DNA of 64,000 bases from Octopus sinensis (Eukaryota), in contig NC_043018.1 in assembly GCF_006345805.1 (NCBI RefSeq), forward strand, positions 25,172,001 through 25,236,000, written 5' to 3'. Below, piece after piece: positions 6,936 to 59,050 of this stretch. The notes beneath the pieces were generated by a model. The model was not told where the DNA came from and ran no database searches. It was given only the letters and a program-made list of their open reading frames with translations. Each line of letters begins with the position of its first letter. Positions within the stretch are counted from its first letter, which is position 1. The position numbers and the translations under genes were made by a program.

Positions 6936-7204
6936 GTACGCTTTCATTACTAACATTTACATGTGAGTGTGTGTATGTGTGTATCAACACCTGACACATG
7001 GTACAGGTAGTACCTGTTCAGATAATGTCGTCTTGAGAGAGTGAGCTAATGTGCAATACAAACATTTGATCATTATAAACAAATCATTTGTGCAGGTCAT
7101 TCAGCAGAAGCTGAACACTCATTTGTTATCTTCGATGGAAGAGTCCATCATATATATATATATATATAGATATATATATACATATATATAGGGAGAGTTT
7201 ACGG

Positions 7205-9239: not shown

Positions 9240-10840
9240 TTTTAATCTGTAGAAAAGTTACAAAAGTGACTTCAACGCTCAAGGCCTGAGTGTTTCGTGT
9301 GTGTATATAACTGTATGTGTGCTAATATATTGAATCAAAGGAGATTGTGTTAAATCCTTTCTCTTGAGTGGGTATGATTGTATAATTTTTTAAAATCTAG
9401 TTCCAAGCAACAGCAGCAACTTTTGTTGTTGATTACTGTATATATAATTATTATTTTTGGATCCAATATTTGATTTTGAGGTAATGGTTCTATAGTGCTA
9501 GGTGGCTCCTCCCTCCAATTGAATCTATCATTACACATAATAAATATAATTTCTTGCTTTTGGTACCAACTGACCCTGATTCTGTAGTTCATTAAGTGAT
9601 CTAAATTTAAAATGTCCATCAAAATTCCATGCTAATTTATGCTCTGAGCTGCAGTTTGATAATGACAAAGTTATTTTAGTAAATTCTTTATTATTTTCTA
9701 AAACAATTAGCAATATCCTAATAAAAGGGTGAGACCATTTGTCTGTAACACAAGCCCTGTTGTTGAAGGGTTTAACTTCAATCAGATGGTTGTGAGTTGA
9801 GGCCCTTTGGTTTTCATACCAGTTATATAATGAGTGGTACCACAATCATCGTCATCATCATTTAACATCCGTTTTCCATGCTGTCATGGGTTGGATAGTT
9901 TGACTGAAAACTGGTAAGATGGGGAGCTGCACCAGGTTCCAATCTGATTTGGCATGGTTTCTATGGCTGGATGCCTTTCCTAATGCCAACCACTCCAAGA
10001 GTGTAGTGTGTGCTTTTTACATGCTACCAACATTGGCCACCAGTTACATGCTTACCAACATTGACCACGATGACGATCTTACTTCATTTGACAGTTTTCT
10101 TCAAGTACAGCATATAACCAAAGGTCTCAGTCACTTATCACTGCCTCTGTGAGGCTCGGCATTCAAAGGATGCTTTTTATGTGCCACCAACACAGGTGCC
10201 AATTACGCGACACTGGCATTGGCCATGTCTACGATTTCACTTGGCTTGATGGGTCTTAATTAAATCCACTTAATAAATTTGTTCCTCGTATCCACAATAA
10301 ATTATTACCATATACAATCACAGTTGAAAAAAAATTTTGTTCTGTTATCTAGATCTAAAAGGTTTTTTGTTTATTTTGTTTTAAATATCTTAATTAAGTA
10401 TTCTAATTGATTTAGTAATCTCTGATTAGATAGGCTAGAATGGAATTTGTAATTGAAAGATCAATTATAAATGAATTTGATACTATTTCTTAATTGGACT
10501 TTAGTGTATACACTCTACTGCCCCAACCAACAGAATGAACCAGGATCATTAGTCTGTCTCTAGAAGGACTGAACATCTACTATTGTGAGGAACTCACTCT
10601 AGTGAGCCTTTCCTCCTGATCTCCCTACCCCCCACTTCAATTTCTTTCTCTCTCTCAGTAGTACCATTATCTCAAACTCTCGGATTATTAGATTAGAAAG
10701 ATTTAAGACTAACTCCAACATACTTCTATATAGTGTTTCACTTTGCATAACAACACTCACTATTTTAATTAAATTTAATCAGATTCTATTTCTTTTTCTT
10801 TCTTCTATTTTGTTTTGTCTCATTATTATTATTATTATTA

Positions 10841-23954: not shown

Positions 23955-25419
23955 TTAAGGTGACAAACTGGGAGAATCATTTGTATGACAAAACGCTTAG
24001 CAGTATTTCTTCTGGGTTTTACCACCACCAAAGTCAACTTTGCCGTTCATTCTTTGGGTGAGGTGATAAAATAGGTACCAGTTGAGCACTGGGATCAATC
24101 TGATTAACCTGCTCCCTATCCCAGAATTGCTAGCATCATGCTTATAGTAGAAAGGGTTATTTGAATCCCTTTTTTAAAATATTGTTGGTGGTCATACATT
24201 CTCCTTTCCCCTCCTACCCCATAATTTCCTGGAGACAATTTTTGTTACCGTAACAGGAGTTTTGTTAATGTAAGGGGCAACATCAGAAACTATATATCTC
24301 TATGTCTTAAACTTATTACCAGGAGTATCTTTAGGGGTTAGGTGGAAGGTGAGAATTTTTAGTTTGTGCAATATTGCTGTTGTTATTGTTGTTTTGTCTC
24401 TCCTCATTTCACCCACCCACCCTCCAATGCATAAAAAATATAAACAGCTAAGGGTTTTGTTTTTTACAGCTCTAATTTCACATACCTTTATATTTCCTCC
24501 TCCCACCCCCCTCAGCAAAAACAAGACACCTTTCCCCCTCCCCCCACCTACCACCCAAACTGTAACTTCACTTAATTTCATGTCTGCCTGATAACAGCTT
24601 TAATAAGATTATCATGTAAAGCAATTCCTTGGGACATTAAACATTCCCACGAGGCCATCGCCATCGGTACCACCCTACTCTCATCCACCCAACCAACCAA
24701 CCCCTCTCCTCTCTCAACCCCACCCACCCCACCACCACCACACACGCATAATCTTTCACTTGATAAATTAGATTGGGGGGTAAACTTATCTCATCATACC
24801 TCCAGGTAGATGGGGGTGGGGTGGACAAGCGGGTACTTACTATAAAGTAAGAGCAATCAGATATGTAATGTACATGATGAATGTGTGTGTGTATATATAC
24901 GCACACATACATATGTGTGTATGTATGTAAGATATGTGTTATATATTCAATGCAGAGAGATTTCTCCTTCCCCCACCCCCAGCCTATCAGCCACTCCCAA
25001 TCTATCACCCAAAGGACCATTATCTGTTACGCATGTTTTATCCTACTTAACATAACATTTTTTGTATTATTTCTCTCATTTGTATAAATACATACATATG
25101 TACATGTATGTGTGTGTGTGTATATACATATATATATATATATGTATGTATGTATATATATGTATATATGTCTAATTTTTGAATCTAAGCATGTTTTCCC
25201 CACCTATTGCCAATATATATTTTTTTCCTTTCTGTTAAAGGTCATGTTTTCTTTATTATAATTATTATTATTTCAAGCAGGAAATCTTCCATAAATCGCC
25301 GCCGGTCCCAGGTGGACGTTAAACTATTTGGCTATTAATGTTTAATAATGAATAATAATTGATTAATTAATTGTTCTCCAATTATTGACAGTACTGCTCT
25401 ATATACATATATGCATACA

Positions 25420-29192: not shown

Positions 29193-29340
29193 CAATCCGG
29201 GCTGAATATCTCCAATCCTGAGGTGCTTTATCTTCCCAATGTCACTTACGAGGATAGTGGTTGGTATACGTGTGTTGCATCGAACTCCATTGGTGTCACA
29301 TACCAGAGTGCCTGGCTTGCTGTTGTCGAGCCTCCAGACA
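29193..29340 (+). CDS. FGFR: FGFR exon, IgIII second half ([49 protein letters not shown])
   Basis: AG 29191-29192, GTAAGT at 29341; NVT.EDxGxYTC.A.NSIG...SAWL.V pattern of FGFR IIIb/IIIc exons; 148 nt, phase 0 to 1. Missed by the ORF track. Confidence 0.95.
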
Positions 29341-30179: not shown

Positions 30180-30366
30180 CTTCCAGCCAACCAAACCAGT
30201 TAGCCGTTTCTCAAGACACATCAAAATCTCACTTACACATCTTGGTTGGTGTCATTGTGACATTTCTCTTCATTCTAATTTCCATTTTAATTATCGTCTG
30301 TCTGAGACGTAAAAGCAGCATCACGGAGGCACCGACTACAAGAAACGTGTCATCGTTATGAAACCT
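30180..30366 (+). CDS. FGFR: FGFR transmembrane exon (TSSQPNQLAVSQDTSKSHLHILVGVIVTFLFILISILIIVCLRRK / frameshift / KQHHGGTDYKKRVIVMKP)
   Basis: CAG acceptor 30177-30179, GTAAGT at 30367; hydrophobic helix followed by RRK. Length is 187 nt but 188 is needed to keep frame with the next exon; see finding. Confidence 0.9.
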
Positions 30367-30468
30367 GTAAGTTTTTGTCTTCGCTTTTACACCGTTTCTT
30401 TCAATCATTTCTGAAAATAATGAAATGTACAGAAAGCCATCACTAAACCATATTCTCCTCATTTTTAG

Positions 30469-30626
30469 AATGACTTATATTACCAGAAAAATCCACAGAA
30501 CGTCATGCAGCCACTTGTGCCTCAAGTCCGAATTGAAGGTCCCAGACGGCGCCTGTCTTCAGAGTTGACCACTATGTCTGAATATGAGATTCCTTTGGAT
30601 AAAAATTGGGAATTTTCTCCTGATCG
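30469..30626 (+). CDS. FGFR: FGFR juxtamembrane exon (NDLYYQK...RRRLSSELTTMSEYEIPLDKNWEFSPDR)
   Basis: AG 30467-30468, GTGAGT at 30627; RLSS and SEYEIPxDxxWE motifs typical of FGFR; phase 0 to 2. Confidence 0.95.
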
Positions 30627-41527: not shown

Positions 41528-41633
41528 GTATAGTATAATGCAAAAATGCTGGACACAAAAGCCGGAAGACCGGCCTACATTTTCAACACTGGTGCAAGAG
41601 ATTGACAAGATCCTCACGTCATTACTAAACGAG
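41528..41633 (+). CDS. FGFR: FGFR kinase C-lobe end exon (YSIMQKCWTQKPEDRPTFSTLVQEIDKILTSLLNE)
   Basis: CAG 41525-41527, GTGTGT at 41634; CW...RPTF motif; 106 nt, phase 2 to 0. Confidence 0.96.
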
Positions 41634-43484
41634 GTGTGTGTATCTCCTCGTAACTTTGGCAACAAGGACGGGACAATGTTGCAGATAATATTAAGGGTGT
41701 GTCTGATTATGAGGTAGTGAATGGGGAGGTAGATCAAGAATGGGAATGAAGTCTGTATTTGGTCTGTGTGTGTTTCGTATGTCTAAATGCGTGTATAAAT
41801 ATGTGCAAATTTGTGTGTGTTTTGCGAGCATGTCTGCTTTGCTGTATGCATGTGTGAGTGAGCCACCATGTAGCTGTGTGTACTGATTTTGTTATCGTTT
41901 CATCCAAAGTCAGCTCCGATTAAGCAGACACGTGATCAAAGCCATTCCAACCATGACCATCATGTCCTTTTATGTATCAGGGATTACATTTGTCCAATGT
42001 GTCCTTTTTTTAAAGACAGAGGTTATCAGCAATACTGTCTGCTTGGCAAGTGGTAAACTTTTTGGGAGTTCAGACCCTTTCAGAGGATCTCAAACTAGTT
42101 CTCTGAATTCAAATCATGCCGAGGCCAGCTTGTTCAATGAGTCCTTTTTGAAATCAACTGACAGTGATTTGGCTGCTATTTCTAGCGAGTCCACCGACCA
42201 TGTAGAAGCCTTTTTGTAAGTTTGTGTATGAAGCATGCATTATGTCTGCACACATGCATACATCTGTGCCTAAATGTATGTATAAGTGTTCTGGTTTGTA
42301 AGCATGAATACTCTGCTGTATGTGTATGTGTGAGTATGTATGCTTATGTAAGTATAAGGCATGGTCGAGGGGGTTAAGCAGTTCACTTCACAATCACTAG
42401 GGTATTGTGTTCTCATCCACTGTGTACCTGTGTGGCATCTTGGGTAAGTTAACTTCTGTTTTAGCCTCAGATCGACCAAATCTAGCCTAACTTAAACACA
42501 CCCCGTGTTACGCTAATTCTGGTTAAGGATTCCATCTCATTAAGTTTTGGGGGACACTGTACCTTTTACGCTATATTTCAGTGAATAAGCTTCTTCAGTT
42601 GATCAGACAACTGGAATGCTCATCGTTGAAACCAACAGTGGGTCCATTTGGTCATACCTGCCCCCAAGATCATGAACATGAAGTTCCAAATTCTATCTCC
42701 CTTGGGGCATGTCTTCTGCCATACATGCATAGTCTTAGTAAAACTAAATTGACAGAAACTGTACAGAAGCCTGCCAGATGGACCTTATTCTCTGATTAAG
42801 GGTACAAGTGTCAGTGGGACTTAGGGAACTGTACTTGTAATTCACTGAGTTAGGTTTCTCAGTTTCTATGGCGTATGTGTTCCCCAGCTGGATGGGATAC
42901 CAGTCCATTGCAGCGTTACTCATTTTTGCCAGCTGAGTGAACTGGAGCAACGTGAAATGAAGTGTTTTGCTCAAGAACACAATGTGTCGCCCAGTCCAGG
43001 AATTGAAACCGCAATCTTACTATCATGATGCTGACACCCTAATTATTATGAAAAGGCTCTGTGGCAGTTCAGTTGATTAAACCAACCGAAGTACTCAACA
43101 TTGAAACCAACACAAGATTCATTTACATGTATCTGGATATCATCATCATTTAACCTCTATTTTCCATGCTGGCATGGGTTAGATGGTTTGACTGGAGATG
43201 GTAAGCACGAAAGCTTCACCAGATTCCAGCTGTCTGTTTTGGCTTGGTTTCTACAGCTGGATGCTCTTCCTAATGCAAACCACTTTACAGAGTGTACTGG
43301 GTGTCTTTTCCATGTCACTAATATGGATGCCCTTTTACTTGTCACTGGCTCAAGTGCTCATTGTTAAAAACATCCGAGAGTCCATTTGGTCATACCTGCC
43401 CCCATGATCATGAACATGAGGTCCCAAATTCTATCTCACTTGGGGCATATATCTTTTGCCATTCATACATACATAATCTTCTTA

Positions 43485-43750
43485 AAATAATTAAAAATAC
43501 ATGCGCCCTTTTTAAAGCCTAGCCAGGTTAATGGGCCCGGTTTCCCAGTTTCTATGGCGTATGTGTTCCCCAGCTGGATGGGATACCAGTCCATCACAGC
43601 GTTACTCATTTTTACCAGCTGAGTGGACTGGAGCAACGTGAAGTGAAGTGTTTTGCTCAAGAACACAACGCATTGCCCAGTCCAGGAATCGAAACCACAA
43701 TCTTACGATCATGGTGCTGACACCCTAACCACTAAGCCACGTGCCTCCAC
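43485..43750 (-). mobile_element. tRNA-derived SINE, family E, with 14-bp target-site duplication
   Basis: Head GGAGGCACGTGGCTTAGTGGTTAGG, GGTTTCGATTCC; TSD ACATAATCTTCTTA at 43471-43484 and 43751-43764. Related copies at about 42840-43040 (-), 19440-19810 (-) and 23140-23480 (+). Confidence 0.85.
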
Positions 43751-45379
43751 ACATAATCTTCTTAGTAAAACTAAATTGACAGAAACTGTCAAACAACCAC
43801 AGATACGTGGTACCCTTTTATGTGTCACCAGCCCTATCCACAGCCATGATTTCACTTTCCCTTGATGTGTCTTCTCAAGCGCTGCTAATCACCAGATATG
43901 TTGGACAAAAACCAGATCTTTACTGTTGTATGTCAGCGTGATGTGTGTGTGTATGCTTTTTCAGTGTGTTAGTTGGTATATTTGACAGCATGTAAGTATG
44001 ATGTTTTTTTTTTATATATTCTTCATCTTGATTGTTTAAGTATTTATCTTAGTTAATCAGGAAATTGTCAAAAAATTTCATTACTGTTATTATTATTAAT
44101 TAAAGGGGACAAAAGAAGCCCCTTATTTTATCTTCATTATATTGTACATAGACTATCAAATTAGTTTTCTGTTAGCTGTCCTCATTAATTGTATATCATA
44201 GTTAGTTGAGACAATGAAACAAGTGCTCAGATACCCCTTAGAGTCTTCAATTTTGTCCCCTTACAGTCTGAAATCAAAACCTACTTGTTGGCCATGCTTG
44301 ATTTCCATTTTTAAAGGGGAAAAAATTGCTTAAAAATGGAACAAAACAAAAGCTAATAGAACTGCTATGTCACTGAAGACTGGGTCTAAGGATTCACTTC
44401 TGCTCCCATTAATGCCTTTCAGGCCATCCTTTAACTCCACTCAACACTAAGTAAAGGTAGAGTTACTTTTTAATGTCAGAATGTCAAGACATCAAAGAAG
44501 ATGCAGGAAATGCTAACTGACAATCAATCCTGATAGCATGAACCAATAAGAAAGCAGCTATGCAGTAGCTTGATCTGCTAAAAATAGCAGCCATATCTCA
44601 TCTCATTATATCGTACAATCTTAAAAACAGAAAGAGCCCTTTGGATAATGCATTCCTGGATATCCCTGAAATGACACACTGCTTACAGCTTAAGGGCCTT
44701 TGATCACATAGGGCTAATCAATTAGTCCTAACCTGGGGTTAAGCAACATCCAACTCCATTGTACAATATAGGAGAGGAAGGATTAAGCAAGTACCATTAA
44801 TATACTGGGGTTGATTCAATGAATTTCTCAGCTAATATAATTGCTATAAAAACTTATATAATGCCAGCCTAATAACCATATACGTACATTACTAAACCTT
44901 GCTTTCAAATCTATCTATAGCTGTAGCCTAAGGTTTTAGCAAGGTACCATTATACTCACCTGGTGGACACATTGCTTCTGGGTTTTCTCTTGGCCATTTG
45001 GGTTATTACAGCATCAGCACAAACACCTTGTTTTTACACCCATAGATGGCGGGGTCAGTTTTGAATCTTTCGTTCAGACATTTGTTGTACAATGAAATGA
45101 GTGCTCTTTCTGGTTCTTACCACTATTTTCGTCAGTCAGGCAAACTGGTGAAAAGAAGGGGTGTGCACCTTACTCAGGGTTACAACACAAAAATGTTTGA
45201 GCTGGTGATCAGTAGTCCAGCTCATTTAAACTCTATAACCATTGCACCTACATGATAGGGGTATCGTGTGTAGTTGTCAATGTCAAAACAAGATAACTTG
45301 ATTCAAATTACGTCTGAGTCACATTGGTAGTGGCAACTATAAACACCAGACTATTATTTTGCTACTGGACTCTGGCCAT

Positions 45380-46381
45380 ATTATGAGAGGATGAAGAGCA
45401 AAGTCAACCTTGGAGGAATTTGAGCTGAGAATGTAAAGAATGTAAACATTTGGTCTGCCATGCTAGTAATTCTGCCAGCTCGCTGCCTTTCTTCTTTTAG
45501 TCATAGCAACAACAACAGGTTTTTAAACATGCAATACAAGGCCTCATATTTTCAAGAGAGTTTATAGTTTGATTAAATAAATGCAGAAAGAATGAAAGGC
45601 AAAAATTGACTTTGGCAGTATTTGAAACTTTTGAACATAAAGAAATGTAGTTAAATATCACAAGGCATTTTATTCACCACATTACTAATTCTGCCATCCT
45701 AGCAGCAATAATAATAATAATAATAATTTCTACTTTAGGCACAAGGCCCCAAATTTTTGGGGAGGGTTCAGTCGATTAAATTGACCCAGTATGCAGCTGG
45801 TACTTAATTTATCAATCTCAAAAGGATAAAAAGGCAAAGTTGACCGTGGCAGAATTTGAACTCAGAATGTAAAGACAGACAAAATACTGCTAAGCATTTT
45901 GCCCGGCATGCTAACATTTCTGCCAGCTCAAATAAGAGTTTCAAATTTTGGCACAAGGCCAGCAATTTTGAAAGGATGGGTGCTAGTTGATTACATTGAC
46001 CGCCATGCTCAGTTGGTATTTTATCAACTCCAAAAGTGTGAAAGCCAAAGTCAACCTTGGCGGCATTTGAACTCAGAATGTAAAGAGCCAAAAAGTGCCG
46101 CTAAGCATTTTGTCTGGCGTGCCAATGATTAGTCCAGCTTGCTGCCCTCTGGGCAATAATAATAATAATAATTCTTTCTACTATAGGCATACGTGTTTTT
46201 TGTGGGGAGGGGAACAGTTGAATACATTAACCCCAATACTCAACTGGTACTTAATTTATCAACCCTGAAAGCATGAAAGGCAAAGTTGACCTCAGCAGAA
46301 TTTGAACTCAGAACGTGGTGACAGGCAAAATACCATTAAGCATTTCACCCAGCGTGCTAACGATTCTGCCAGCTTGCCACC

Positions 46382-46414
<33 letters not shown>

Positions 46415-46660
46415 TAATAATAATAATAATAATATTGATTCTTTCTAGTGGAAGTACAAGGCCTCAAATTTGGGGAAGGGATTAAGGTGATTACATCGAC
46501 CCCAGTGCATAACTGGTACTTATTTAATCGACCCCCCCCCAGAAGGATGAAAGGCAAAGTTGACCTCGGCAGAATTTGAACTCAGAACATGGCGACGGGC
46601 GAAATACCACTAAGCATTTCGCCCACCGTGCTAACAATTTTGCCAGCTTGCCACCTTAAT
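45380..46660 (-). mobile_element. Head-to-tail stack of about five SINE family B copies separated by (AAT)n
   Basis: Repeated GATGAAAGGCAAAGTTGACCTC..GAATTTGAACTCAGAAC units. Confidence 0.85.
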
Positions 46661-46844
46661 AATAATGATAATAATAATTACAACAGTGATGGCTGTGATA
46701 AGTGTACTTGTGTGTTCCTATGTTGTATATAATGAGCTAGGGTTTCAGAGTATCACCTTTTAAAGAAGGTAGCTGTTTCAGTTGATGCTGCTATTGTTGT
46801 TGTTGTTGTCAGCATGTGTGTACCAAAATGTTTCTTTCAAACAG

Positions 46845-46886
46845 CCTGACGAGAGCCACTCCGTCTTTGAAGTGCCGTGCTACTGA
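46845..46886 (+). CDS. FGFR: Candidate alternative FGFR terminal exon (PDESHSVFEVPCY*)
   Basis: TTTCTTTCAAACAG acceptor ending 46844; in frame (phase 0) with the preceding exon; unique CpG-retaining sequence; AATAAA at 47097-47102. Confidence 0.5.
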   Translation, partial: PDESHSVFEVPCY

Positions 46887-47260
46887 CTCTGGATCTTCGG
46901 CGCCGCCGTGCAGAAGGAAAGAGGACAAGAGGTCACGCACAAAACACACAAAAGGTGATTCTGTTGCCAAAGACCTAGGCTGCTGTTGTTGCTATATTTA
47001 TTTGAAGACAGAAATCTGCTACAGTTTAACCAGATTTAGTCGTAGTTGGTAGGTGTTCAGTATCCCCAGCCCATAACAAAAAAATATAATGAGTAAAATA
47101 AAACTTTGATCTCTGTTTTAGCAAAAAAAAAAAAATAGTTAAAATGAGGGGTTCTGTGTTTTTATCTTCCCAACTCTTCGTTTTGATTCTGTTTGCTTTC
47201 CTTTCCCTCCCATGCTAGTGGCTTGCATGCATGTTTGTCTTTAAGCTGGTTTGAACCACA

Positions 47261-47668
47261 TACTCTCTTTTTACTCTTTTACTTGTTTCAGTCATTTGAC
47301 TGTGGCCGTGCTGGAGCACCGCCTTTAGTCGAGCAAATCGACCCCAGGACTTATTCTTTGTAAGCCCAGTACTTATTCTATCGGTCTCTTTTGCCGAACC
47401 GCTAAGTGACGGGGACATAAACACACCAGCATCGGTTGTCAAGCAATGCTAGGGGGACAAACACAGATACACAAACATATACACACACACATACATATAT
47501 ATATACGACAGGCTTCTTTCAGTTTCTGTCTACCAAATCCACTCACAAGGCATTGGTCGGCCCAAGGCTATAGCAGAAGACACTTGCCCAAGATGCCACG
47601 CAGTGGGACTGAACCCAGAACCATGTGGTTGGTAAGCAAGCTACTTACCACACAGCCACTCCTGCGCC
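47261..47668 (-). mobile_element. SINE family A, young copy
   Basis: Reverse complement of the family consensus with intact head. Confidence 0.9.
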
Positions 47669-50316
47669 TATACACTTTGGAAATGTATCTTTTTATGAAA
47701 TGCGCAGACAATATTTTAGTGGGGAAAAGAAATGATAACTTTATTTTTCGATACATTCTCTCTCTACACAAATTACATTTCTTTCCATTGGGGTTGAACA
47801 TACATGTACCTGTCACAATTAATTTTGCTCCAACGGTTGCTAGGTGATGAATTGGCAGAGTCTTTAGAATGGTGGACAAAATAAATGCCTTGCAGTTTAT
47901 ATTTCAACACCTTGTGATCTGAGTTCAAATTCTGACAAGGTCAGCCATGCCTTCTGGAATCAATAAACAAAGTACCAGTCTCAGGTGGTTGACTTACTTA
48001 AGATGATGGGAAGAGAAGTGTTCTGTTTATTTCTGAGTTCAAATCCCACTGTGGCCTTCCTGGGTGGTGGACTTAATTTCTCATCTACTTTAACACTACC
48101 ACCTGGCTCTTGAGTGCCATGAGCAGAATCCTCTCTGTTACATGCATTTGGGCCAGGTCTCCTGAATCTCTCTCTCTCGTTTCATAAGCCTTGTAAAAGG
48201 GTTAAGGATCTTTTCCTTCTCCATTGACTAAAAGAAGCTCATTTCTGTTGCTTGGTAAGAATCCAGTAACATAGGACACCAGCAAAACTTGTCTCATCAA
48301 AATGCTGCATGGTCCATGCAGGCATGGAAAAGTGACACATGCGCATCACATATGCACACGTGCGCGCACACACACACACACAACAGGCTTCCACACAAAA
48401 CGTATTAGCCAATCTGGAGTAATAACAGAAGACATTTGTGCAATAGGTTTGAACCCAGATCCCCATGGTTATGATGCAGCCTTCTTAATCACACAGCCAT
48501 GCTTTTGCCCTTATCAATAACGTTGTTTGTTGCTTGCTTGTGTTGTGACCTTTCCATAGTTTAGAAAATAGGGAAAAGCTTGCCATATGGATGCATTTCT
48601 CAGCTCTATAGTACTCACCATTCTTTAATAGAAATGGAAAATGCAATAACAGTCATCTAACCTTGAGGTTAGCATTTGTTTTTAGCTTACACATAAGCCC
48701 ACGAATTTGGGTGAAGGGTTAGTCAAGTAAATCAACTCCTTCTCCAGGACTGAAGCTTAATTTTGCAACTCTGGAAGGACCCACTACTGTGGGCCCCAAT
48801 TTACTATATTGCTTGTGTGGACACCCTAAAATCCTATATGGACCCTGGTTGAGAATCACTGCCTTAACCCTTTCATTACCATATTTATTTTGAGATGCTG
48901 TGTTTCTTTCAATTAATCATCTTCAGACTACATCTCTCACCACTTCAATGGTCATTTGGCTAAAAGCTTATTATGTATTTTCCTAATTATTAATCTCATT
49001 TTGTGGGGTAAAAGACTTCAATATTTATACTGTTTTCAAAGATCAAATCGATTGAAATGTAGTGTAGACAAAAATAAAAGCTTGGCACTCCATCACTTAA
49101 AACAACGTGAGTTCCAGTTGATCCAATAAATGGAACAGCCTGCTCATGGAATTAACATGCAAGTGGCTGAGTACTCCGCAGACACAGATACCCTTAAAAG
49201 TAGTTCTCAGGGAGATACAGTGAAACACAGAATATGACAACGCGGGCCTTTTGAATTACAGCTACAACTCCATTTTGCCAGTTGTGTTGACTGGTACAGT
49301 GTGAAATAAAGTGTCTTGCTCAAGGATAACATGCTACTGGGAATCGAAGTTACGATCTTATGATCCTGAGCCAAATAGCCCTAACCACTAAGCCATGTGC
49401 CTTCACTGAACTGTAGTGTAGACATAGATATTAAAAAAAAAAAATTTTTATCTCTAAAAATGATAATTAATTCAAAGATTATAATATTGTTTTCTACTCT
49501 AGGCACAAGGCCTGAAATTTTGGGGTAGGGGGCCAGTCTATTAGATCGACCCTAGTATGCAAATGGTACTTAATTTTTCAACCCCAAAAGGATGAAAGGC
49601 AAAGTCGACCTCAGTGGAATTTGATCTCAGGACGTTAAGACAGGTGAAATACTGCTATGCATTTCACCCGGTGTGCTAACGTTTCTTATTTTTTTGCTGC
49701 CGACAAGGGGCTACACGCAGAGGGGACAAACAAGAACAGACAAAGGGATTAAGTCGATTATATCAAACCCAGTGCGTAACTTGTACTTATTTAATTGACC
49801 CCAAAAGGATAAAAGGCAAAGTCGACCTCGACAGAATTTGAACTCAGGACGTAACAGCAGACGAAATACTGCTATGCATTTCGCCTGGCGTGCTAATGTT
49901 CCTGCCAGTTCGTCACCTTTCAAAGATTTTAATATATTATAATGAGCAGCAACTCGTTTCATAGATTTATAAGTTCTTATAATGTTGACAGTAACCCTGG
50001 CCCTTTTTTCTTCTCAAACCTCTATCTCTTGCCACACGACAGTGTGACAGACACTGAATAATCAGAATCGAATCCTGGTCAATTCTGAGTTATATACAGA
50101 TCTTGAAGCACAGTTAGTGTTCAGTGACCTCTAGTTATCCACGTATGATGTGGCTGGAGTTTAGGATCCTCTGGTCAAACTGTTGCAGTATAAGATTGTT
50201 CATGAGCTGTCATCAAATAAATCCCTGTCATCGCCAATAGTTTTAGTTGTTGAGTCACTATCCAATTAGTTCTGCACACAAAAACACATCAAGCACAAAC
50301 ATAGTTGTGTGGTTAA

Positions 50317-50804
50317 CCCTTTAGCATTTAAACTGGCCATGTCTGGCCCAAATATTCTACCTGTCTTATGTTGAAACTAGCCAGATTTGACTTCTCACCA
50401 GAGCTGTGGAGTCAAAACAAAAAGCTTCGACTCTGACTTGGACTCCTGTACTATTGGCACCTCCGACTCCTCTTTATGTAATTAAGTGATTGTGGTATAC
50501 ATATCTCATAAAGCATATGCATACACTTGTACGGCCTATATGTTATAACTGGTTTATATTAAAGAATAAAGACATTGTGAGTCAGAGTTGGTATAGTTTT
50601 ATCAACTCTGACTCCAACTTCCCCTTAATTGTTTCTGAATCCAACTCTACAGCCCTGCTTCTCACATCTACCCTATAGTGTAATTTCTAAAAATAAACAG
50701 TCATACCATCGAAATCCCAAAGCTATGAGATAATGCAGGATAAATCCAAAACAATGTGAATAAACAACCATTGCATTTGGCAGATTAATCTGAACGTTAA
50801 AGGG
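50317..50804 (+). mobile_element. piggyBac-like MITE, family 2, interrupted by a hAT MITE
   Basis: TIRs CCCTTTAGCATT / AACGTTAAAGGG, TTAA on both sides (50313-50316, 50805-50808). Confidence 0.8.
50399..50657. mobile_element. Non-autonomous hAT-type MITE
   Basis: Imperfect TIRs CAGAGCTGTGGAGT / ACTCTACAGCCCTG with a perfect 8-bp TSD CTTCTCAC (50391-50398, 50658-50665). Confidence 0.8.
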
Positions 50805-52390
50805 TTAAAGATGCTTGCTTCAGAATCCCACGATTTGGGTTTTGATCCAGCTGCACGTGAACAGAGGCAAGGATCTTCATATTACAAGCAGACTTCAGTC
50901 ATTGGAAACTGTACAGAAGCCTGTTGTACATGTACCATTTGCTGAAAGACATAAGCAATATATATTAGTAACACTGAAAAGTAATATTTATCCCATTTTA
51001 TCTCCTTAAGCATTTGGATTAATCTGTCAGATGTAATGCTTATTTATTCACATTATTTTGAATTAATCATGAATTATCTTGTAACTTCAAAATTTTGATG
51101 ATGTGACAGTTTATTTTTAGAACGACATTGTAGGGTAGGTATGAGATGCCTGATCTGGCCAGTTTGAACATAAAACAAGTAGAATATATTGGCTGGTTGA
51201 ACAGCCCATACTGGAGCAGATACCACAAGAGAAACTCTCATATTGGCCATGTTTAAGTAGGGATAAATATTTACCTCTTGATGTAAACAATGGTGAGAAA
51301 ATCGAAAAAAAACTGATTTTTTCACTATCCCTCACCATATTTGTAAGATCTCAGTTGTAAGATCTCCCTTCTCGCTCCAGAAATCAGAAATGCTGTGAAG
51401 CAGAGGGATAAAACCTGTTTACAAAGCAACTGCAGCCAACAACTGTTGTTGATAAATTTTGGTATAAAATAAATAGACGAACCAGCAGAGATTTTGTGAT
51501 GACTTATAGTTGATGCACAGACTCGGACAGTATTTAGTTATGGGCAGTTCGTTTGCTATCCTTCATTCCTGTTATGCTCCTGGTCAGGTTTCATCAAAGT
51601 GACCAATGAGCAAATCCATTCCGTCTGTGCCCAGCATACCTTCAATTACAGTTCATATAAAACTAACATATCCTTTATTGTTTTCTTTTGTTTTTTTGGT
51701 GGTTGGGGTGTAAAGACATATAAGGAGATTTGACTGCTATTTCTAGTTGATCCTCTAATTTCTTGTCTACATTTTTTTATGTTAATTTGCAGCAGTTCAC
51801 TTTGTAACCATGTGATTCTTGGTTCAATCTTGCTGTGTAGCATTACTTTCATTCATTCATCCTCTGATGTGGCTGAACAACGAATGTTTACAGGATGAGT
51901 TGTACTGTTCATCTTTTCAACCACTAATTACAAAGCATGGCTAGCAAGGCCTCCGTCCAGATGATTTTCCTGAATCACCATCTCACCCTTGTATGCCAAT
52001 CCATCACAGGGTGACCCCATTTACATTTGAGTGGACTAGAGCAATGTGAAATGAAGGGTTTTGCTCCAGAACACAATGCATTGCCCAGTCTGAGAATCGA
52101 AATCACGAGCTAACCATCAGTTGACCAATTACATAATTGGAATTTTGGCTGGTGAAAACTGTGCAGAAGCCCCTCAGATAGGACTGAATTTAATTAACTT
52201 CTGTGAAAGAGATTGAACATCAGAAGAAAGCAATGGCAAACCTTCTCCTGTAATCAGCTCTCAAAATCTTCTTGGTGTTCCACCAGGTCACAACAAGTCC
52301 AAAATTTGATTTGACACTGCCACCTGGCTCTTGGATGCCATGAGCAGAATCCTCCTTGTTACATGCATTTGGGTCAGGTCTCCTGGATAT

Positions 52391-52433
<43 letters not shown>

Positions 52434-52726
52434 CCTCTCTCCCTCTCTCCAGAAGCCTTGTAGAAGGGTTATAGGTGTTTTCCTTTTCCATTAACTAAAA
52501 GTATCCAGTGACATAAGACAACAGCAAAACTGTTAGTTTAGTTTAATTCTTATGTATCTGCATGAATTGTATATATATACCGTTTCTTGGGTGTTTGCTA
52601 CTCAAATAAGAATGTAGGTGTTTGAAATGGTCACTTCTGTAACAGCTGACGTCATGGTAGATGGACAATTTGCTGACAGGACTATTGGCTGATTGGACAA
52701 TAAGTCGACATGGGGAAGTATCAATC

Positions 52727-52960
52727 ATGGAGTTCATCAAATCAGAACAAGGAGGCAAAAAGCTTCTTTACAAAGGGTACTCCTATATTATTGATAGAAC
52801 CAGAAAAGAAAAGACTTATTGGAGATGTGCAAATTGTAAACTGTGCAGTGCTAGACTGACAGCAATTGATGATGAAATTAGCCAGACTCCTGACCACGTA
52901 CGTCTACCTACGCCAATTGAAAATCATGCTGTCTGTCAGCGAATTGTCTGGACACGGTAG
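52727..52960 (+). pseudogene. FLYWCH zinc-finger fragment, probable Mutator/MULE transposase relic
   Basis: MEFIKSEQGGKKLLYKGYSYIIDRTRKEKTYWRCANCKLCSARL...DHVR fits the FLYWCH pattern (F..S..G...L...GY.Y......YWRC....C.A); final His is Arg; no DDE domain follows. Confidence 0.7.
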
Positions 52961-54102
52961 CCATCATACTCATTGTCCTTATCTCCAGTTCCTTGTCATC
53001 AATTTCTGTATGAGAGTGGGATTCAAGAGTTTCTGTATGCTTTCTGAAACTTAAAATGTTTGTTTGACCCTTAGCTTTCTACTTGTCTATATGAGATTTG
53101 ATCACGGTACTTTAGCAATGGATGCTATCAAACAACTGCATTTTAAGTTTCTTCAACTTGAGATAGTTGTGGCTGAGTATGTTGTTAATTTAACTGCAGG
53201 TCAGCCTGTATTGAGTATAACTACAATCAAAGACATTCCAGTTTTGACCTTCCCATCCTTCTCTCAAGCAATTGTGTATCTAGGACTACATTATCCAGTG
53301 AGCTGAAGGAAATTTGTCTGCTATTTCTAGCAGTTTGTGCAACCACTTAGAGGCTCCCTCTTTGACCCAGAGAGCGAATGTGTTGCCATCTTGCACTTGT
53401 TTGCAGTTGTTGGGTTGTGGCCATGCTGGGACTCTGCCTTGAAGGGTTTAGTTAAACAAATGAAACCCAGTATTTAATTTTATAAACCTGGTACTTGTTC
53501 TATTGGTCTCTTTTACCGAACTGCTAACTTCAAGGGATACAAACACACACACACACACATAGATATCAAACAATGAGAATGAGTGCTCAACACCGCATTG
53601 GTGGATAATGATTCTTTATATATGGATTAAGGCTACCATTGGTTTCGTGTTAAGGAAACCCTTAACAATTATCAAGCTGATTACATGGAACATTGGTGTT
53701 TGTTTCCATTTATATATATATATTTATATGCACACACACATGGTGGGTTTCTTTCATTTTCTGTCATCCAAATCCACTTTTTGGTCTGCCCAGGCTATAG
53801 TAGAAGACATTTGTTCAAGGTGTCACACAGTGGGGCTGAACCCAGAACCTTACCTGCTCCATGAAGACTTCAATAAACCTTCTCTGACTAACAATATTCA
53901 AGTCACTTGGCCATTGTCTGCAATTCCTCAACTCCCATCCTTACCAATATGTAAATCATCTATAAAAATACTAACTTTATCACTCATAGAATTGTTAAGA
54001 TTAGGAAAGAAAGAAAAATCTGTAAATTTTTTTTTTTTTTTTCTGTGAGAGATTCTGTCATCTTCATAATAATAATATTTGGTTTTCTTCTTCTTCTTGC
54101 AG

Positions 54103-54216
54103 AAATATCTTGAAATAGAAAGTCCAACAAGTACAACGTCAGACAGTCAGTATTCATCTATGTCACATAGCAGCACTAGTAGTACCGAAGGTGTTTCACG
54201 TTCAGAAAGCTCGTGA
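54103..54216 (+). CDS. FGFR: FGFR terminal exon (KYLEIESPTSTTSDSQYSSMSHSSTSSTEGVSRSESS*)
   Basis: Pyrimidine tract with AG at 54101-54102, phase 0; YLEI corresponds to the vertebrate YLDL PLCgamma site; Ser/Thr-rich tail; TGA 54214-54216. Confidence 0.9.
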   Translation, partial: KYLEIESPTSTTSDSQYSSMSHSSTSSTEGVSRSESS

Positions 54217-57672: not shown

Positions 57673-58056
57673 TTAACCAAGTAGAGTTAATCGCCACATT
57701 AAAGTGACTTTTCTATGTTACTACTAGTTTAACCCAAGGCAGGTCTTCCACCAGCTGGTTATCGGTGCAGCATTTAATCTGGCTCAAATATTCTACATGT
57801 TTTATGTTAAAATCGGCCAGATCCATCCTCCTAGATCCTTCTAATATGTCATTCTGAAAATATAAAAGCGTAATTTTGTAATCTTGAAGCTTATAAGATA
57901 ATGCAGGATAAATTCAAAACAGTATGAATAAATAAGGATTATATTTGACAAAGTAATCTGAATATTACAGTTTTTCGAGATCAGTGACGAAAAGTTACTG
58001 GAAAAACGTTATAAGGATTTGCATTGGGACACCCTTCATCGAAAACCGGTGATTGT

Positions 58057-58101
58057 CGTATGCTGACGACAGGTCAATACCTAGAAACTGCAGTCCGTGC
58101 G
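58057..58101 (+). ncRNA. Type I minimal hammerhead ribozyme motif
   Basis: Stem I CGUAUG/CGUGCG; core CUGACGA 58063-58069; stem II AGGU-caau-ACCU; GAAA 58084-58087; palindromic stem III ACUGCAGU; GUC site ending 58095. The 10.1-11.1 position is a C-A mismatch. Confidence 0.75.
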
Positions 58102-59050
58102 TATCACTTAGGTTGACGAGGGAGGGATGACCTCCTTTTGCAAATACCATAAGGGCACAGAAAGTGTGCCTAAAGCCAGCTGGAGACGATGTTCTCCTGG
58201 AGCTACAAGCTACATAACACCCACCCTTAGTGGTTAGCCATATTGAGATGGCTAGTATATCTCACATAATTTGAATACTAAAGGACTGAAACTCGCCCAG
58301 GCACCGCTTTTAACTTATAATAAGGATTGGTTCTAAGAGTATGTATCAAATACTATTTCTGATGCTTTGTCATTTAGTACAACTCTCTGCCAAAATCCAT
58401 TTAAAGGAATTAACCACCTTCTGCTAATACTTATTATATACATGTGTGTTTATTATTAAGGTAGCGAGCTTTCAGAATCGTTAGCATACTAGATGGAATG
58501 CTTAGCGGTATTTCGCTCATCACTATGTTCTGAGTTCAAATTCCACCAAGGTTGACTTTGTCTTTCATCCTTTTTGGGGTCAATGAATTTAAGTACCAGT
58601 GAAAGACTGGGGTTGATGTAATTGACTTGTCCTTCCCGCTAAATTTTCAGGCCTTTGTGCCTATAGTAGAAAGGATTATTATTATTATTATCATTACATT
58701 ATGATGTCAGGAGGGAGAGCAGCATCCATGACTTTTTCTTTCTCCTAGCTCTTCCTTCCCACCACTTCCCGGACTCTCTAAGACTTGTTGGGTGAGGTAT
58801 CTGAAGATATGGGCAAAATGCTTGCAGCTGAGGGTACTTTGCTGACAGCATGCAATGAGCAAGTGGCAGTGGTAAACCAGAACAATCTGCTATTTCCAAA
58901 GCTTTGGTCAAGCTGAGGTTATAGCAGAAAACACTTGCTCAAGTGGTTGTACTGTGAGATTGAACCCAAAAGCTACAGCTGTGAAGCAAACTTCTTAACC
59001 ACACAGCCATGGCTACATTCAAATAGTGCATGTATGTGCATATGCATATA

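What the first reader, a model, noticed from the sequence alone, without database searches (positions are those of the whole stretch)
46831..47130. Candidate alternative last exon giving an FGFR tail without the PLCgamma tyrosine
Seen: within the 12.5-kb last intron, a unique CpG-rich island starts exactly at an acceptor (TTTCTTTCAAACAG|46845). In frame with ...SLLNE it reads PDESHSVFEVPCY*, with AATAAA at 47097-47102 and T/G-rich sequence downstream. Known: vertebrate FGFR tails contain a ...DSVF...PC motif, the YLDL tyrosine (Y766 of FGFR1) docks PLCgamma, and FGFR2 has alternative C-termini lacking it. Inference: mutually exclusive terminal exons, one with YLEI (54103) and one without, forming a signalling switch in this mollusc receptor.
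Basis: partly seen in the sequence, partly recalled or inferred. Interest (0 to 1): 0.75.

Follow-up and report, generated by a model that had tools for sequence, protein, structure and literature searches.

The report
Possible tail-swapping exon in octopus FGFR

Summary
The sequence facts hold. The donor lies after ...SLLNE (41633, phase 0). There is an AG at 46843-44, the ORF PDESHSVFEVPCY* (46845-46886) and AATAAA at 47097. The last intron is 12,469 nt, and the canonical last exon carries KYLEI (54103). The patch is single-copy in the 2.72-Gb Octopus sinensis genome and CpG-undepleted (o/e 0.94 against 0.33 for the intron).

The patch is bracketed instead by a strong acceptor at 46813 and a strong donor at 46954, giving a 142-nt exon-like unit. 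Its only open frame is the one entered from the phase-0 donor. Inclusion would still abolish YLEI, by frameshift.

It reaches it through the 46813-equivalent acceptor plus a 34-nt mini-exon that is not preserved in O. sinensis.

The three other Octopus protein models found (O. sinensis, O. bimaculoides, O. vulgaris), 12 decapodiform FGFR proteins (an Idiosepius sequence and 11 from transcript-length Logan contigs) and a genomic retro-pseudogene all carry the canonical tail. The "DSVF...PC" resemblance is probably chance.

The parts
41528..41633 (+). Penultimate coding exon of the FGFR gene (end of the kinase domain, ...CWTQKPEDRPTF...SLLNE). Its donor is GAG|gtgtgt in phase 0.
   Evidence: Exact spliced match to XP_029649481.1 (P0165). 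Sequence read.
41803..41853 (+). Counterpart of the 34-nt mini-exon implied by the O. bimaculoides model P0157 (VQICVCFA...). The donor TGT|gtgagt follows 41853. In O. sinensis the stretch is 51 nt, with 17 extra nt flanked by TTTGC repeats, and it is preceded by AT rather than AG.
   Evidence: tblastn of P0157 matches VQICVCFA at 41803-41826. Sequence read. The donor ranks 11 of 728. The O. bimaculoides DNA itself was not available, so the indel is inferred from the protein.
46813..46954 (+). Exon-like unit of 142 nt. The acceptor is ttgttgttgtcag|CAT and the donor AAG|gtgatt. GC is 0.51 with 8 CpG. Only one frame is open throughout, and it is the one entered from the phase-0 donor at 41633. 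Because 142 = 3n+1, splicing on to 54103 would read E-I-S-stop (TGA at 54111-13).
   Evidence: Acceptor rank 19 of 726 and donor rank 13 of 728. Only 0.27% of placements in the intron are bracketed as well, and the minus strand has no comparable sites. Frames. The identity of the P0157 tail to the window breaks exactly at this AG.
46845..46886 (+). It is in frame with SLLNE only if the weak acceptor at 46845 (or the weaker one at 46782) is used.
47097..47135 (+). AATAAA (47097-47102) followed by an A13 run (47123-47135). This is a possible poly(A) site if the unit is used as a terminal exon, and also an oligo-dT internal-priming site.
   Evidence: 13 AATAAA in the intron and two A-runs of 10 or more.
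54103..54216 (+). Canonical last coding exon: KYLEIESPTSTTSDSQYSSMS...SESS*. It carries the PLCgamma-type YLEI and the lophotrochozoan SDSQYSSMS motif.

Best explanation
The CpG-rich single-copy patch is most likely a real but unannotated alternative exon of the Octopus sinensis FGFR gene. It is defined by the acceptor at 46813, and by either the donor at 46954 (a 142-nt cassette) or the AATAAA/A-run near 47100-47135 (a terminal exon).

When the patch is included after ...SLLNE, the receptor keeps its complete kinase domain. It loses the conserved tail: YLEI, the counterpart of the PLCgamma-docking YLDL, and the SDSQYSSMS serine cluster. From the phase-0 donor and the strong acceptor, the reading frame is the only one open through the unit (window:46813-46953:+, serine- and basic-rich). 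As a cassette it shifts the last exon's frame to E-I-S-stop.

Shown here: the anatomy, uniqueness, composition, splice-signal ranks and frames, and that a sister-species gene model uses this acceptor. Inferred: that the exon is used at all, and what it does to signalling.
For: The patch is single-copy in 2.72 Gb.

Of the seven CpG-dense patches in the 64-kb window, five are young repeats and one is a true FGFR exon. This one is the only unexplained patch.

Its CpG o/e of 0.94 and GC of 0.51 lie at the upper end of the gene's true exons (o/e 0.31-0.94, mean 0.62), against 0.33 for the intron. The richness ends at the donor.

The acceptor at 46813 ranks 19 of 726 and the donor at 46954 ranks 13 of 728. 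Only 0.27% of placements in the intron are bracketed as well, and nothing comparable exists on the minus strand.

Only one of the three frames is open across the unit, and it is the one set by the phase-0 donor.

The O. bimaculoides model P0157 joins at exactly this AG and is then identical over 23 residues.

A precise precedent exists: human FGFR2 E18-C3 and E18-C4, alternative last exons that replace the C-terminus; C3 is stated to lie in intron 17 (PMC9436779).
Against: No RNA evidence could be obtained.

The three other Octopus protein models found carry only the canonical tail, and none is accompanied by an isoform with this exon: XP_029649481.1 (O. sinensis), XP_014769539.1 (O. bimaculoides) and CAI9738965.1 (O. 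vulgaris). A search with the alternative tail found only P0157 among proteins of 272-865 aa.

Twelve decapodiform FGFR proteins all carry the canonical tail: the Idiosepius paradoxus sequence BAI67805.1 and 11 proteins from transcript-length Logan contigs.

The only processed copy of the gene in the genome records the canonical junction and 3'UTR.

P0157 looks like a homology or ab initio model: it has an intron-derived first exon, the gene is split in two, and its partner model has a repeat-derived last exon. It may therefore have picked up the same signals I did rather than a transcript.

The PWMs rest on only 12 sites each, and the thresholds were set after the fact. Pseudo-exons with good signals are common in long introns.

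Identity with O. bimaculoides is uninformative. Intron-derived parts of the same model are about 92% identical at the amino-acid level, which is the same as some coding exons.
Confidence: 0.5

Rival explanations
1. The patch is not an exon. It is a unique stretch of intron that by chance carries splice-like signals and short open frames. The O. bimaculoides model is a gene-prediction artefact that picked up the same signals.
For: Apart from P0157, every Octopus protein model, every complete decapod FGFR protein and the retro-pseudogene carry the canonical tail. P0157 has several hallmarks of an unsupported prediction. Six pseudo-exon pairs pass the same thresholds in this intron. Open frames of 88 codons or more occur 12 times in the intron. 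AATAAA is frequent.
Against: This leaves the undepleted CpG (o/e 0.94) of a single-copy 116-nt patch unexplained, when every other CpG-dense patch in the window is a young repeat or a true exon. It also leaves unexplained why the patch ends at a top-2% donor and begins just after a top-3% acceptor on the gene's own strand.
Confidence: 0.33
2. A mutually exclusive terminal exon starts at 46845, encodes PDESHSVFEVPCY*, is polyadenylated near 47120, carries a tail motif homologous to the vertebrate DSVF...PC, and acts as a regulated switch that removes PLCgamma docking.
For: The ORF, stop codon and AATAAA are real. The same 13 residues end the O. bimaculoides model P0157. SVF...PC on the + strand of the intron has a nominal chance of about 3%. 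Human FGFR2 has such terminal exons.
Against: The acceptor at 46845 ranks 144 of 726 and lies inside a better-defined unit. P0157 reaches this frame by a different path, which O. sinensis cannot follow. Five of the eight CpGs lie beyond the stop. Lophotrochozoan FGFRs have SDSQYSSMS where vertebrates have DSVFS, and it sits in the canonical exon. None of about 50 mollusc, annelid or brachiopod tails shows SVF...PC. The A13 run would mimic a 3' end.
Confidence: 0.12
3. The patch is a non-coding functional element, such as a protein-bound, unmethylated intronic regulatory site or part of an unannotated non-coding transcript. The splice-like flanks are incidental.
For: CpG is retained in a strongly CpG-depleted gene body. 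There is no protein family match in any frame.
Against: There is no Rfam match and no unusual RNA fold on either strand: z = +0.3 and +1.2. This reading does not explain the strand-specific acceptor and donor bracket.
Confidence: 0.05

Closest known systems
Human FGFR2 alternative last exons E18-C3 and E18-C4 (and C2)
   Same: These are alternative exon 18 forms used instead of the canonical last exon (C3 is stated to lie in intron 17). They leave the kinase domain intact and replace or delete the C-terminal tail. [quoted passage not shown] The octopus unit sits in the equivalent intron, directly after the exon ending the kinase domain. In every frame it removes the YLEI/YLDL tyrosine.
   Different: The octopus unit has a good donor, so it may be a frame-shifting cassette rather than a terminal exon. 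Its use in RNA is unproven. There is no sequence relationship to the human exons. If real, it arose independently.
UniProt A0A0L8HTJ0 (Octopus bimaculoides gene model, P0157)
   Same: It ends ...SLLNE-(12 aa)-CVYQNVSFKQPDESHSVFEVPCY. Its last 23 residues are identical to window:46815-46883, and it enters at the AG equivalent to 46811-12.
   Different: It uses an extra 34-nt mini-exon to reach this frame. The model is N-terminally truncated with an intron-derived start, and it skips 32 juxtamembrane residues. Whether any transcript supports it is unknown. The Gnomon-predicted XP_014769539.1 from the same species has the canonical tail.
Canonical lophotrochozoan FGFR C-tail (EEYLDLEP...SDSQYSSMS)
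   Same: The octopus canonical last exon (54103-54216) is a clear member: KYLEIESPTSTTSDSQYSSMS.
   Different: The candidate exon shares nothing with it. The vertebrate DSVFS motif aligns in position with SDSQYSS of this canonical tail, not with the candidate exon.

Membership tests
Fibroblast growth factor receptor (host gene) | Ig-like ectodomain, a single transmembrane segment and a tyrosine-kinase domain with [11 protein letters not shown], and orthology to annotated FGFRs | tested here: met
   Window exons match XP_029649481.1 (O. sinensis FGFR2-like) at 100% identity apart from HSP-edge residues. Pfam PK_Tyr_Ser-Thr scores E = 5.5e-100 on P0157. The kinase motifs were found.
Alternative C-terminal exon of an FGFR (kind: human FGFR2 E18-C3/C4) | Lies in the intron between the last kinase-domain exon and the canonical last exon, on the gene's strand | tested here: met
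   46813-46954 lies inside intron 41634-54102. The splice signals are on the + strand only.
Alternative C-terminal exon of an FGFR (kind: human FGFR2 E18-C3/C4) | Spliced to the upstream exon's donor in real transcripts (junction reads or cDNA) | not testable with these tools
The only indirect support is the gene model P0157, whose evidence base is unknown.
Alternative C-terminal exon of an FGFR (kind: human FGFR2 E18-C3/C4) | Inclusion removes the PLCgamma-docking tyrosine and the rest of the tail while keeping the kinase domain | tested here: met
   This was worked out in silico. Frame a from 46813 is open and then gives E-I-S-stop in the last exon. The PDES frame stops at 46884. Neither contains a Y-[LIV]-[DE]-[LIV] motif.
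Alternative C-terminal exon of an FGFR (kind: human FGFR2 E18-C3/C4) | Own polyadenylation signal and cleavage site (if terminal) | tested here: inconclusive
   AATAAA lies at 47097, but there are 13 in the intron, and an A13 run covers the expected cleavage zone. A good donor at 46954 argues for cassette use.
Alternative C-terminal exon of an FGFR (kind: human FGFR2 E18-C3/C4) | Conserved beyond the neutral level in related species | tested here: inconclusive
   23 of 23 residues are identical in O. bimaculoides. Intron-derived parts of the same model are about 92% identical as well, so the two species are too close to discriminate. No DNA of other cephalopods was reachable.
Vertebrate-type FGFR tail motif (DSVF...PC) | The motif is present at the homologous tail position in related (lophotrochozoan) FGFRs, so that the octopus peptide could be homologous | tested here: not met
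   Vertebrate (DSVF), amphioxus (DDVF) and chelicerate (EDVF, MDVF) tails have such a motif. About 50 mollusc, annelid, brachiopod and nemertean tails have SDSQYSSMS instead, in the canonical exon. None has SVF...PC.

The most novel reading that the evidence does not exclude
Octopods have evolved, independently of vertebrates, a regulated exon in the last FGFR intron. It swaps the conserved YLEI/SDSQYSSMS tail for a short unrelated tail, giving a kinase-competent receptor uncoupled from PLCgamma-type docking and from tail-mediated regulation. This would be a molluscan counterpart of human FGFR2 E18-C3/C4.
Probability: 0.3. Interest if true: 0.55.

Novelty: new member of a known kind. Interest (0 to 1): 0.35.

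Why it matters
C-terminal truncation of FGFR2 by alternative last exons is a well-studied way of changing receptor output in mammals. Whether tail-swapping of FGFRs exists outside vertebrates is not known. If the octopus exon is used, it would be an independent invention of the same trick in a lophotrochozoan. That would give a natural experiment on what the conserved YLDL/SDSQYSSMS tail does.

If the exon is not used, the case still has value as a caution. A short ORF, a nearby AATAAA and a remembered motif are not enough to call an exon, and an old gene model can repeat the same guess without adding evidence.

Tried and rejected

Protein databases.
- A phmmer search with the juxtamembrane exon gave mostly ORF fragments plus the oyster and Owenia FGFRs.
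- A word search with the Owenia kinase domain and tail recovered the octopus models.
- A search with the alternative tail of P0157 found only P0157 itself.
- The 37-aa ORF was too short to search.
- The 78-aa ORF in the other frame found nothing among proteins of 43-136 aa. That is no evidence about longer isoforms.

Retro-copied mRNA 3' end. AATAAA followed by an A13 run suggested a retro-copy of another gene's mRNA end, but no parent or other copy exists in the genome.

Repeat or transposable-element origin. Rejected: the patch is single-copy, and it belongs to no repeat family within the intron.

Structured RNA or miRNA. No Rfam hit and no fold signal.

Minus-strand exon. There are no good splice sites and no Pfam match.

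Paralogous FGFR with a similar exon. None was found. The second strong hit in the genome is a processed pseudogene.

Conservation with O. bimaculoides as evidence of constraint. Rejected as uninformative.

Papers. Nothing was found on cephalopod FGFR isoforms. The O. bimaculoides genome paper is not held.

Spliced models. Exons were searched by reference one at a time, and frames across junctions were worked out by arithmetic on the referenced coordinates.

Full report
WHAT THE WINDOW IS. The window is G000:C22:25172001-25236000 of a 2.72-Gb, 13,516-contig assembly. Its + strand carries an FGF-receptor gene. The exons match XP_029649481.1, [quoted passage not shown] (P0165, 780 aa), at 100% identity apart from residues at the HSP edges. 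By exact spliced matching I placed the junctions. The acceptors are 6122, 6748, 30180, 32109, 33494, 35639, 37001, 37983, 39892, 41528 and 54103. The penultimate coding exon is 41528-41633 and ends ...SLLNE with the donor GAG|gtgtgt in phase 0. The last coding exon starts at 54103 with KYLEIESPTSTTSDSQYSSMS.... The last intron is 12,469 nt.

THE OBSERVATION. There is an AG at 46843-44, then PDESHSVFEVPCY and TGA at 46845-46886, and AATAAA at 47097-47102.
- The stretch is single-copy. DNA searches of the whole genome with 46831-47130 and with 46690-47125 return only the window itself.
- The six-frame protein search also finds only the window at a significant level (the other six hits have E of 0.28 or worse), and a degenerate SVFEVPCY pattern finds only the window.
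- The patch lies between SINE-type repeats.
- It holds 8 CpG in 116 nt, o/e 0.94, against 0.33 for the intron. That puts it in the top 0.35% of windows.

I built crude position-weight matrices (PWMs) from the gene's own 12 acceptors and 12 donors.
- The acceptor at 46845 scores 0.3 and ranks 144 of 726 AGs in the intron, below 10 of the 12 true acceptors.
- Thirty-two nt upstream, ttgttgttgtcag|CAT (exon start 46813) scores 7.1, rank 19. That is typical of the true acceptors.
The GC- and CpG-rich stretch ends at AAG|gtgatt (exon end 46954), a donor ranking 13 of 728.
- AATAAA occurs 13 times in the intron. An A13 run at 47123-47135 sits where cleavage would be expected, so oligo-dT data would show a false 3' end there.

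WHAT THE PATCH LOOKS LIKE. The unit 46813-46954 is 142 nt with GC 0.51 and 8 CpG.
- Only 0.27% of placements in the intron have an acceptor and a donor of these ranks within 40 nt on either side. The minus strand has nothing comparable. The thresholds were chosen after the fact, so I take this as roughly p = 0.01.
- The 64-kb window holds seven CpG-dense patches. Four are repeats that recur within the window. One (57986-58122) is a young repeat with thousands of candidate copies at 94-96% identity. One is a true FGFR exon. This patch is the only one left.
- The gene's true exons have CpG o/e 0.31-0.94, mean 0.62. The two flanking coding exons have 0.84 and 0.90.
- Of the three frames, only the one entered from the phase-0 donor at 41633 is open across the unit.
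- Because 142 = 3n+1, splicing on to 54103 would read GAA ATA TCT TGA, that is E-I-S-stop. I worked this out by arithmetic on the referenced coordinates.
- If the donor is skipped, the same frame runs on to a TAG at 47050-52.

THE O. BIMACULOIDES MODEL. The search for octopus FGFR proteins turned up UniProt A0A0L8HTJ0 (P0157, 494 aa). It ends ...SLLNE-VQICVCFAVCMS-CVYQNVSFKQPDESHSVFEVPCY.
- Mapping the model onto the window shows its path. VQICVCFA is window 41803-41826, in the intron 170 nt past the donor.
- VCM matches 41844-41852 in another frame and is followed by TGT|gtgagt, a donor of rank 11 of 728.
- The rest is identical to the window from the base after the AG at 46811-12. The single mismatch (S against A) is the codon split by that junction.
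- The model therefore uses the 46813-equivalent acceptor and gets into the PDES frame through a 34-nt mini-exon.
- In O. sinensis the corresponding stretch is 51 nt. The 17 extra bases are flanked by TTTGC repeats, an indel I inferred from the protein because no O. bimaculoides DNA was available. It is preceded by AT, not AG.
- The same path in O. sinensis would land in the other frame, or would not exist at all. That argues against selection on the PDES peptide.

HOW FAR P0157 CAN BE TRUSTED. The model starts in intron-derived sequence (window 25196-25311). It skips 32 juxtamembrane residues through GT/AG sites inside exons. It is the 3' half of a gene split in two, and the 5' half (P0166) ends in a repeat-derived exon (window 10161-10256). 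From my own knowledge, the 2015 annotation mixed homology-based, ab initio and transcript-based models. I could not read the paper. P0157 may therefore simply have reacted to the same signals. It is a second opinion, not expression evidence.

EVIDENCE FOR THE CANONICAL TAIL ONLY.
- XP_029649481.1 (O. sinensis), XP_014769539.1 (O. bimaculoides, P0108) and CAI9738965.1 (O. vulgaris, P0109) all end KYLEI...SESS.
- A search with the last 50 residues of P0157 found seven candidates among proteins of 272-865 aa, and only P0157 itself scored. Their 90%-identity clusters hold no alternative-tail member.
- Twelve decapodiform FGFR proteins all end EEYLEIESPMSTTSDSQYSSMS...: the Idiosepius paradoxus sequence BAI67805.1 and 11 proteins from transcript-length Logan contigs.
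- The genome holds a processed FGFR pseudogene (G000:C19, locus L008, minus strand). It covers residues 537-757, is 94.6% identical and has stop codons. It carries the SLLNE|KYLEI junction and, after an internal deletion and a SINE insertion, the canonical 3'UTR.
- All of this shows that the canonical form dominates. It does not exclude a minor or tissue-restricted isoform.

THE MOTIF ARGUMENT. Vertebrate tails (sturgeon P0094, lamprey P0150) have DSVF. Amphioxus has DDVF and chelicerates have EDVF or MDVF. About 50 mollusc, annelid, brachiopod and nemertean FGFRs have SDSQYSSMS at that position, within the canonical last exon, and none has SVF...PC. The lophotrochozoan counterpart of DSVFS is therefore already in the canonical octopus exon. 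SVF followed within 12 residues by PC appears on the + strand of a simulated 12.5-kb intron in about 3% of trials, and the pattern was defined after seeing the peptide. I treat the resemblance as chance.

CONSERVATION. The 23 identical residues between O. sinensis and O. bimaculoides carry no weight. Intron-derived parts of P0157 are about 92% identical to the window, with one indel, and so are the Ig3 and transmembrane exons. More distant species are needed, and none was reachable.

OTHER READINGS CHECKED.
- There is no Rfam match and no unusual fold on either strand.
- There is no Pfam match for the 78-aa + frame or the 53-aa minus-strand ORF.
- There is no parent gene for a retro-copied 3' end.
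- Open frames of 88 codons or more are common in the intron, with 12 found.

VERDICT. The sequence facts are real.
- About 0.5: an unannotated alternative exon defined by 46813 and by 46954 or the poly(A) signal, whose inclusion swaps the FGFR tail. In kind this resembles human FGFR2 E18-C3/C4 (PMC9436779).
- About 0.33: not an exon at all.
- About 0.05: a non-coding element.
Junction reads would settle it quickly.

Noticed in passing
L008 (G000:C19:13898823-13901927), minus strand, locus positions about 919-2121: A processed, intronless pseudogene of this FGFR. It covers residues 537-757, is 94.6% identical at the amino-acid level and has in-frame stops. It carries the canonical SLLNE|KYLEI junction, an internal deletion of the serine-rich tail, a SINE insertion and then the canonical 3'UTR at 96.6% identity.
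   Followed up: yes
window 30305-30320: The reading frame of the transmembrane/juxtamembrane exon shifts by one base in an A-run (…CGT AAA A|GC AGC… where the protein needs AAA AAG CAG). This probably explains the 'LOW QUALITY PROTEIN' flag on XP_029649481.1. It is either an assembly homopolymer error or a real indel.
   Followed up: partly
window 30180-30626: Public models differ in the juxtamembrane region. O. sinensis has ...DYKKRVIVMKP-NDLYYQ-KNPQ. O. vulgaris lacks NDLYYQ, through a second AG 18 nt inside the exon, at 30487. O. bimaculoides XP_014769539 lacks DYKKRVIVMKP. P0157 skips 32 residues through internal GT/AG sites. This may be alternative splicing near the region that is alternatively spliced in vertebrate FGFRs.
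   Followed up: no
window 10161-10256 and 25196-25311: The two O. bimaculoides 2015 half-gene models use a repeat-derived terminal exon (P0166) and an intron-derived first exon (P0157). Both map to these intronic places.
   Followed up: partly
window 41827-41843: O. sinensis has a 17-nt segment flanked by TTTGC direct repeats that is absent from the sequence implied by the O. bimaculoides model. This looks like a slippage-type indel, inferred from the protein only.
   Followed up: partly
window 57950-58200: A young, CpG-rich, high-copy repeat, with 2,922 first-look candidates in the genome and scored copies 94-96% identical. It lies downstream of the FGFR gene.
   Followed up: yes
window 6941-29193: O. 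sinensis and O. bimaculoides proteins have three residues (NRK) between the exons ending at 6941 and starting at 29193, and the O. vulgaris model lacks them. No exact spliced junction across this 22-kb intron reproduced the protein, so a micro-exon is possible but was not located.
   Followed up: no
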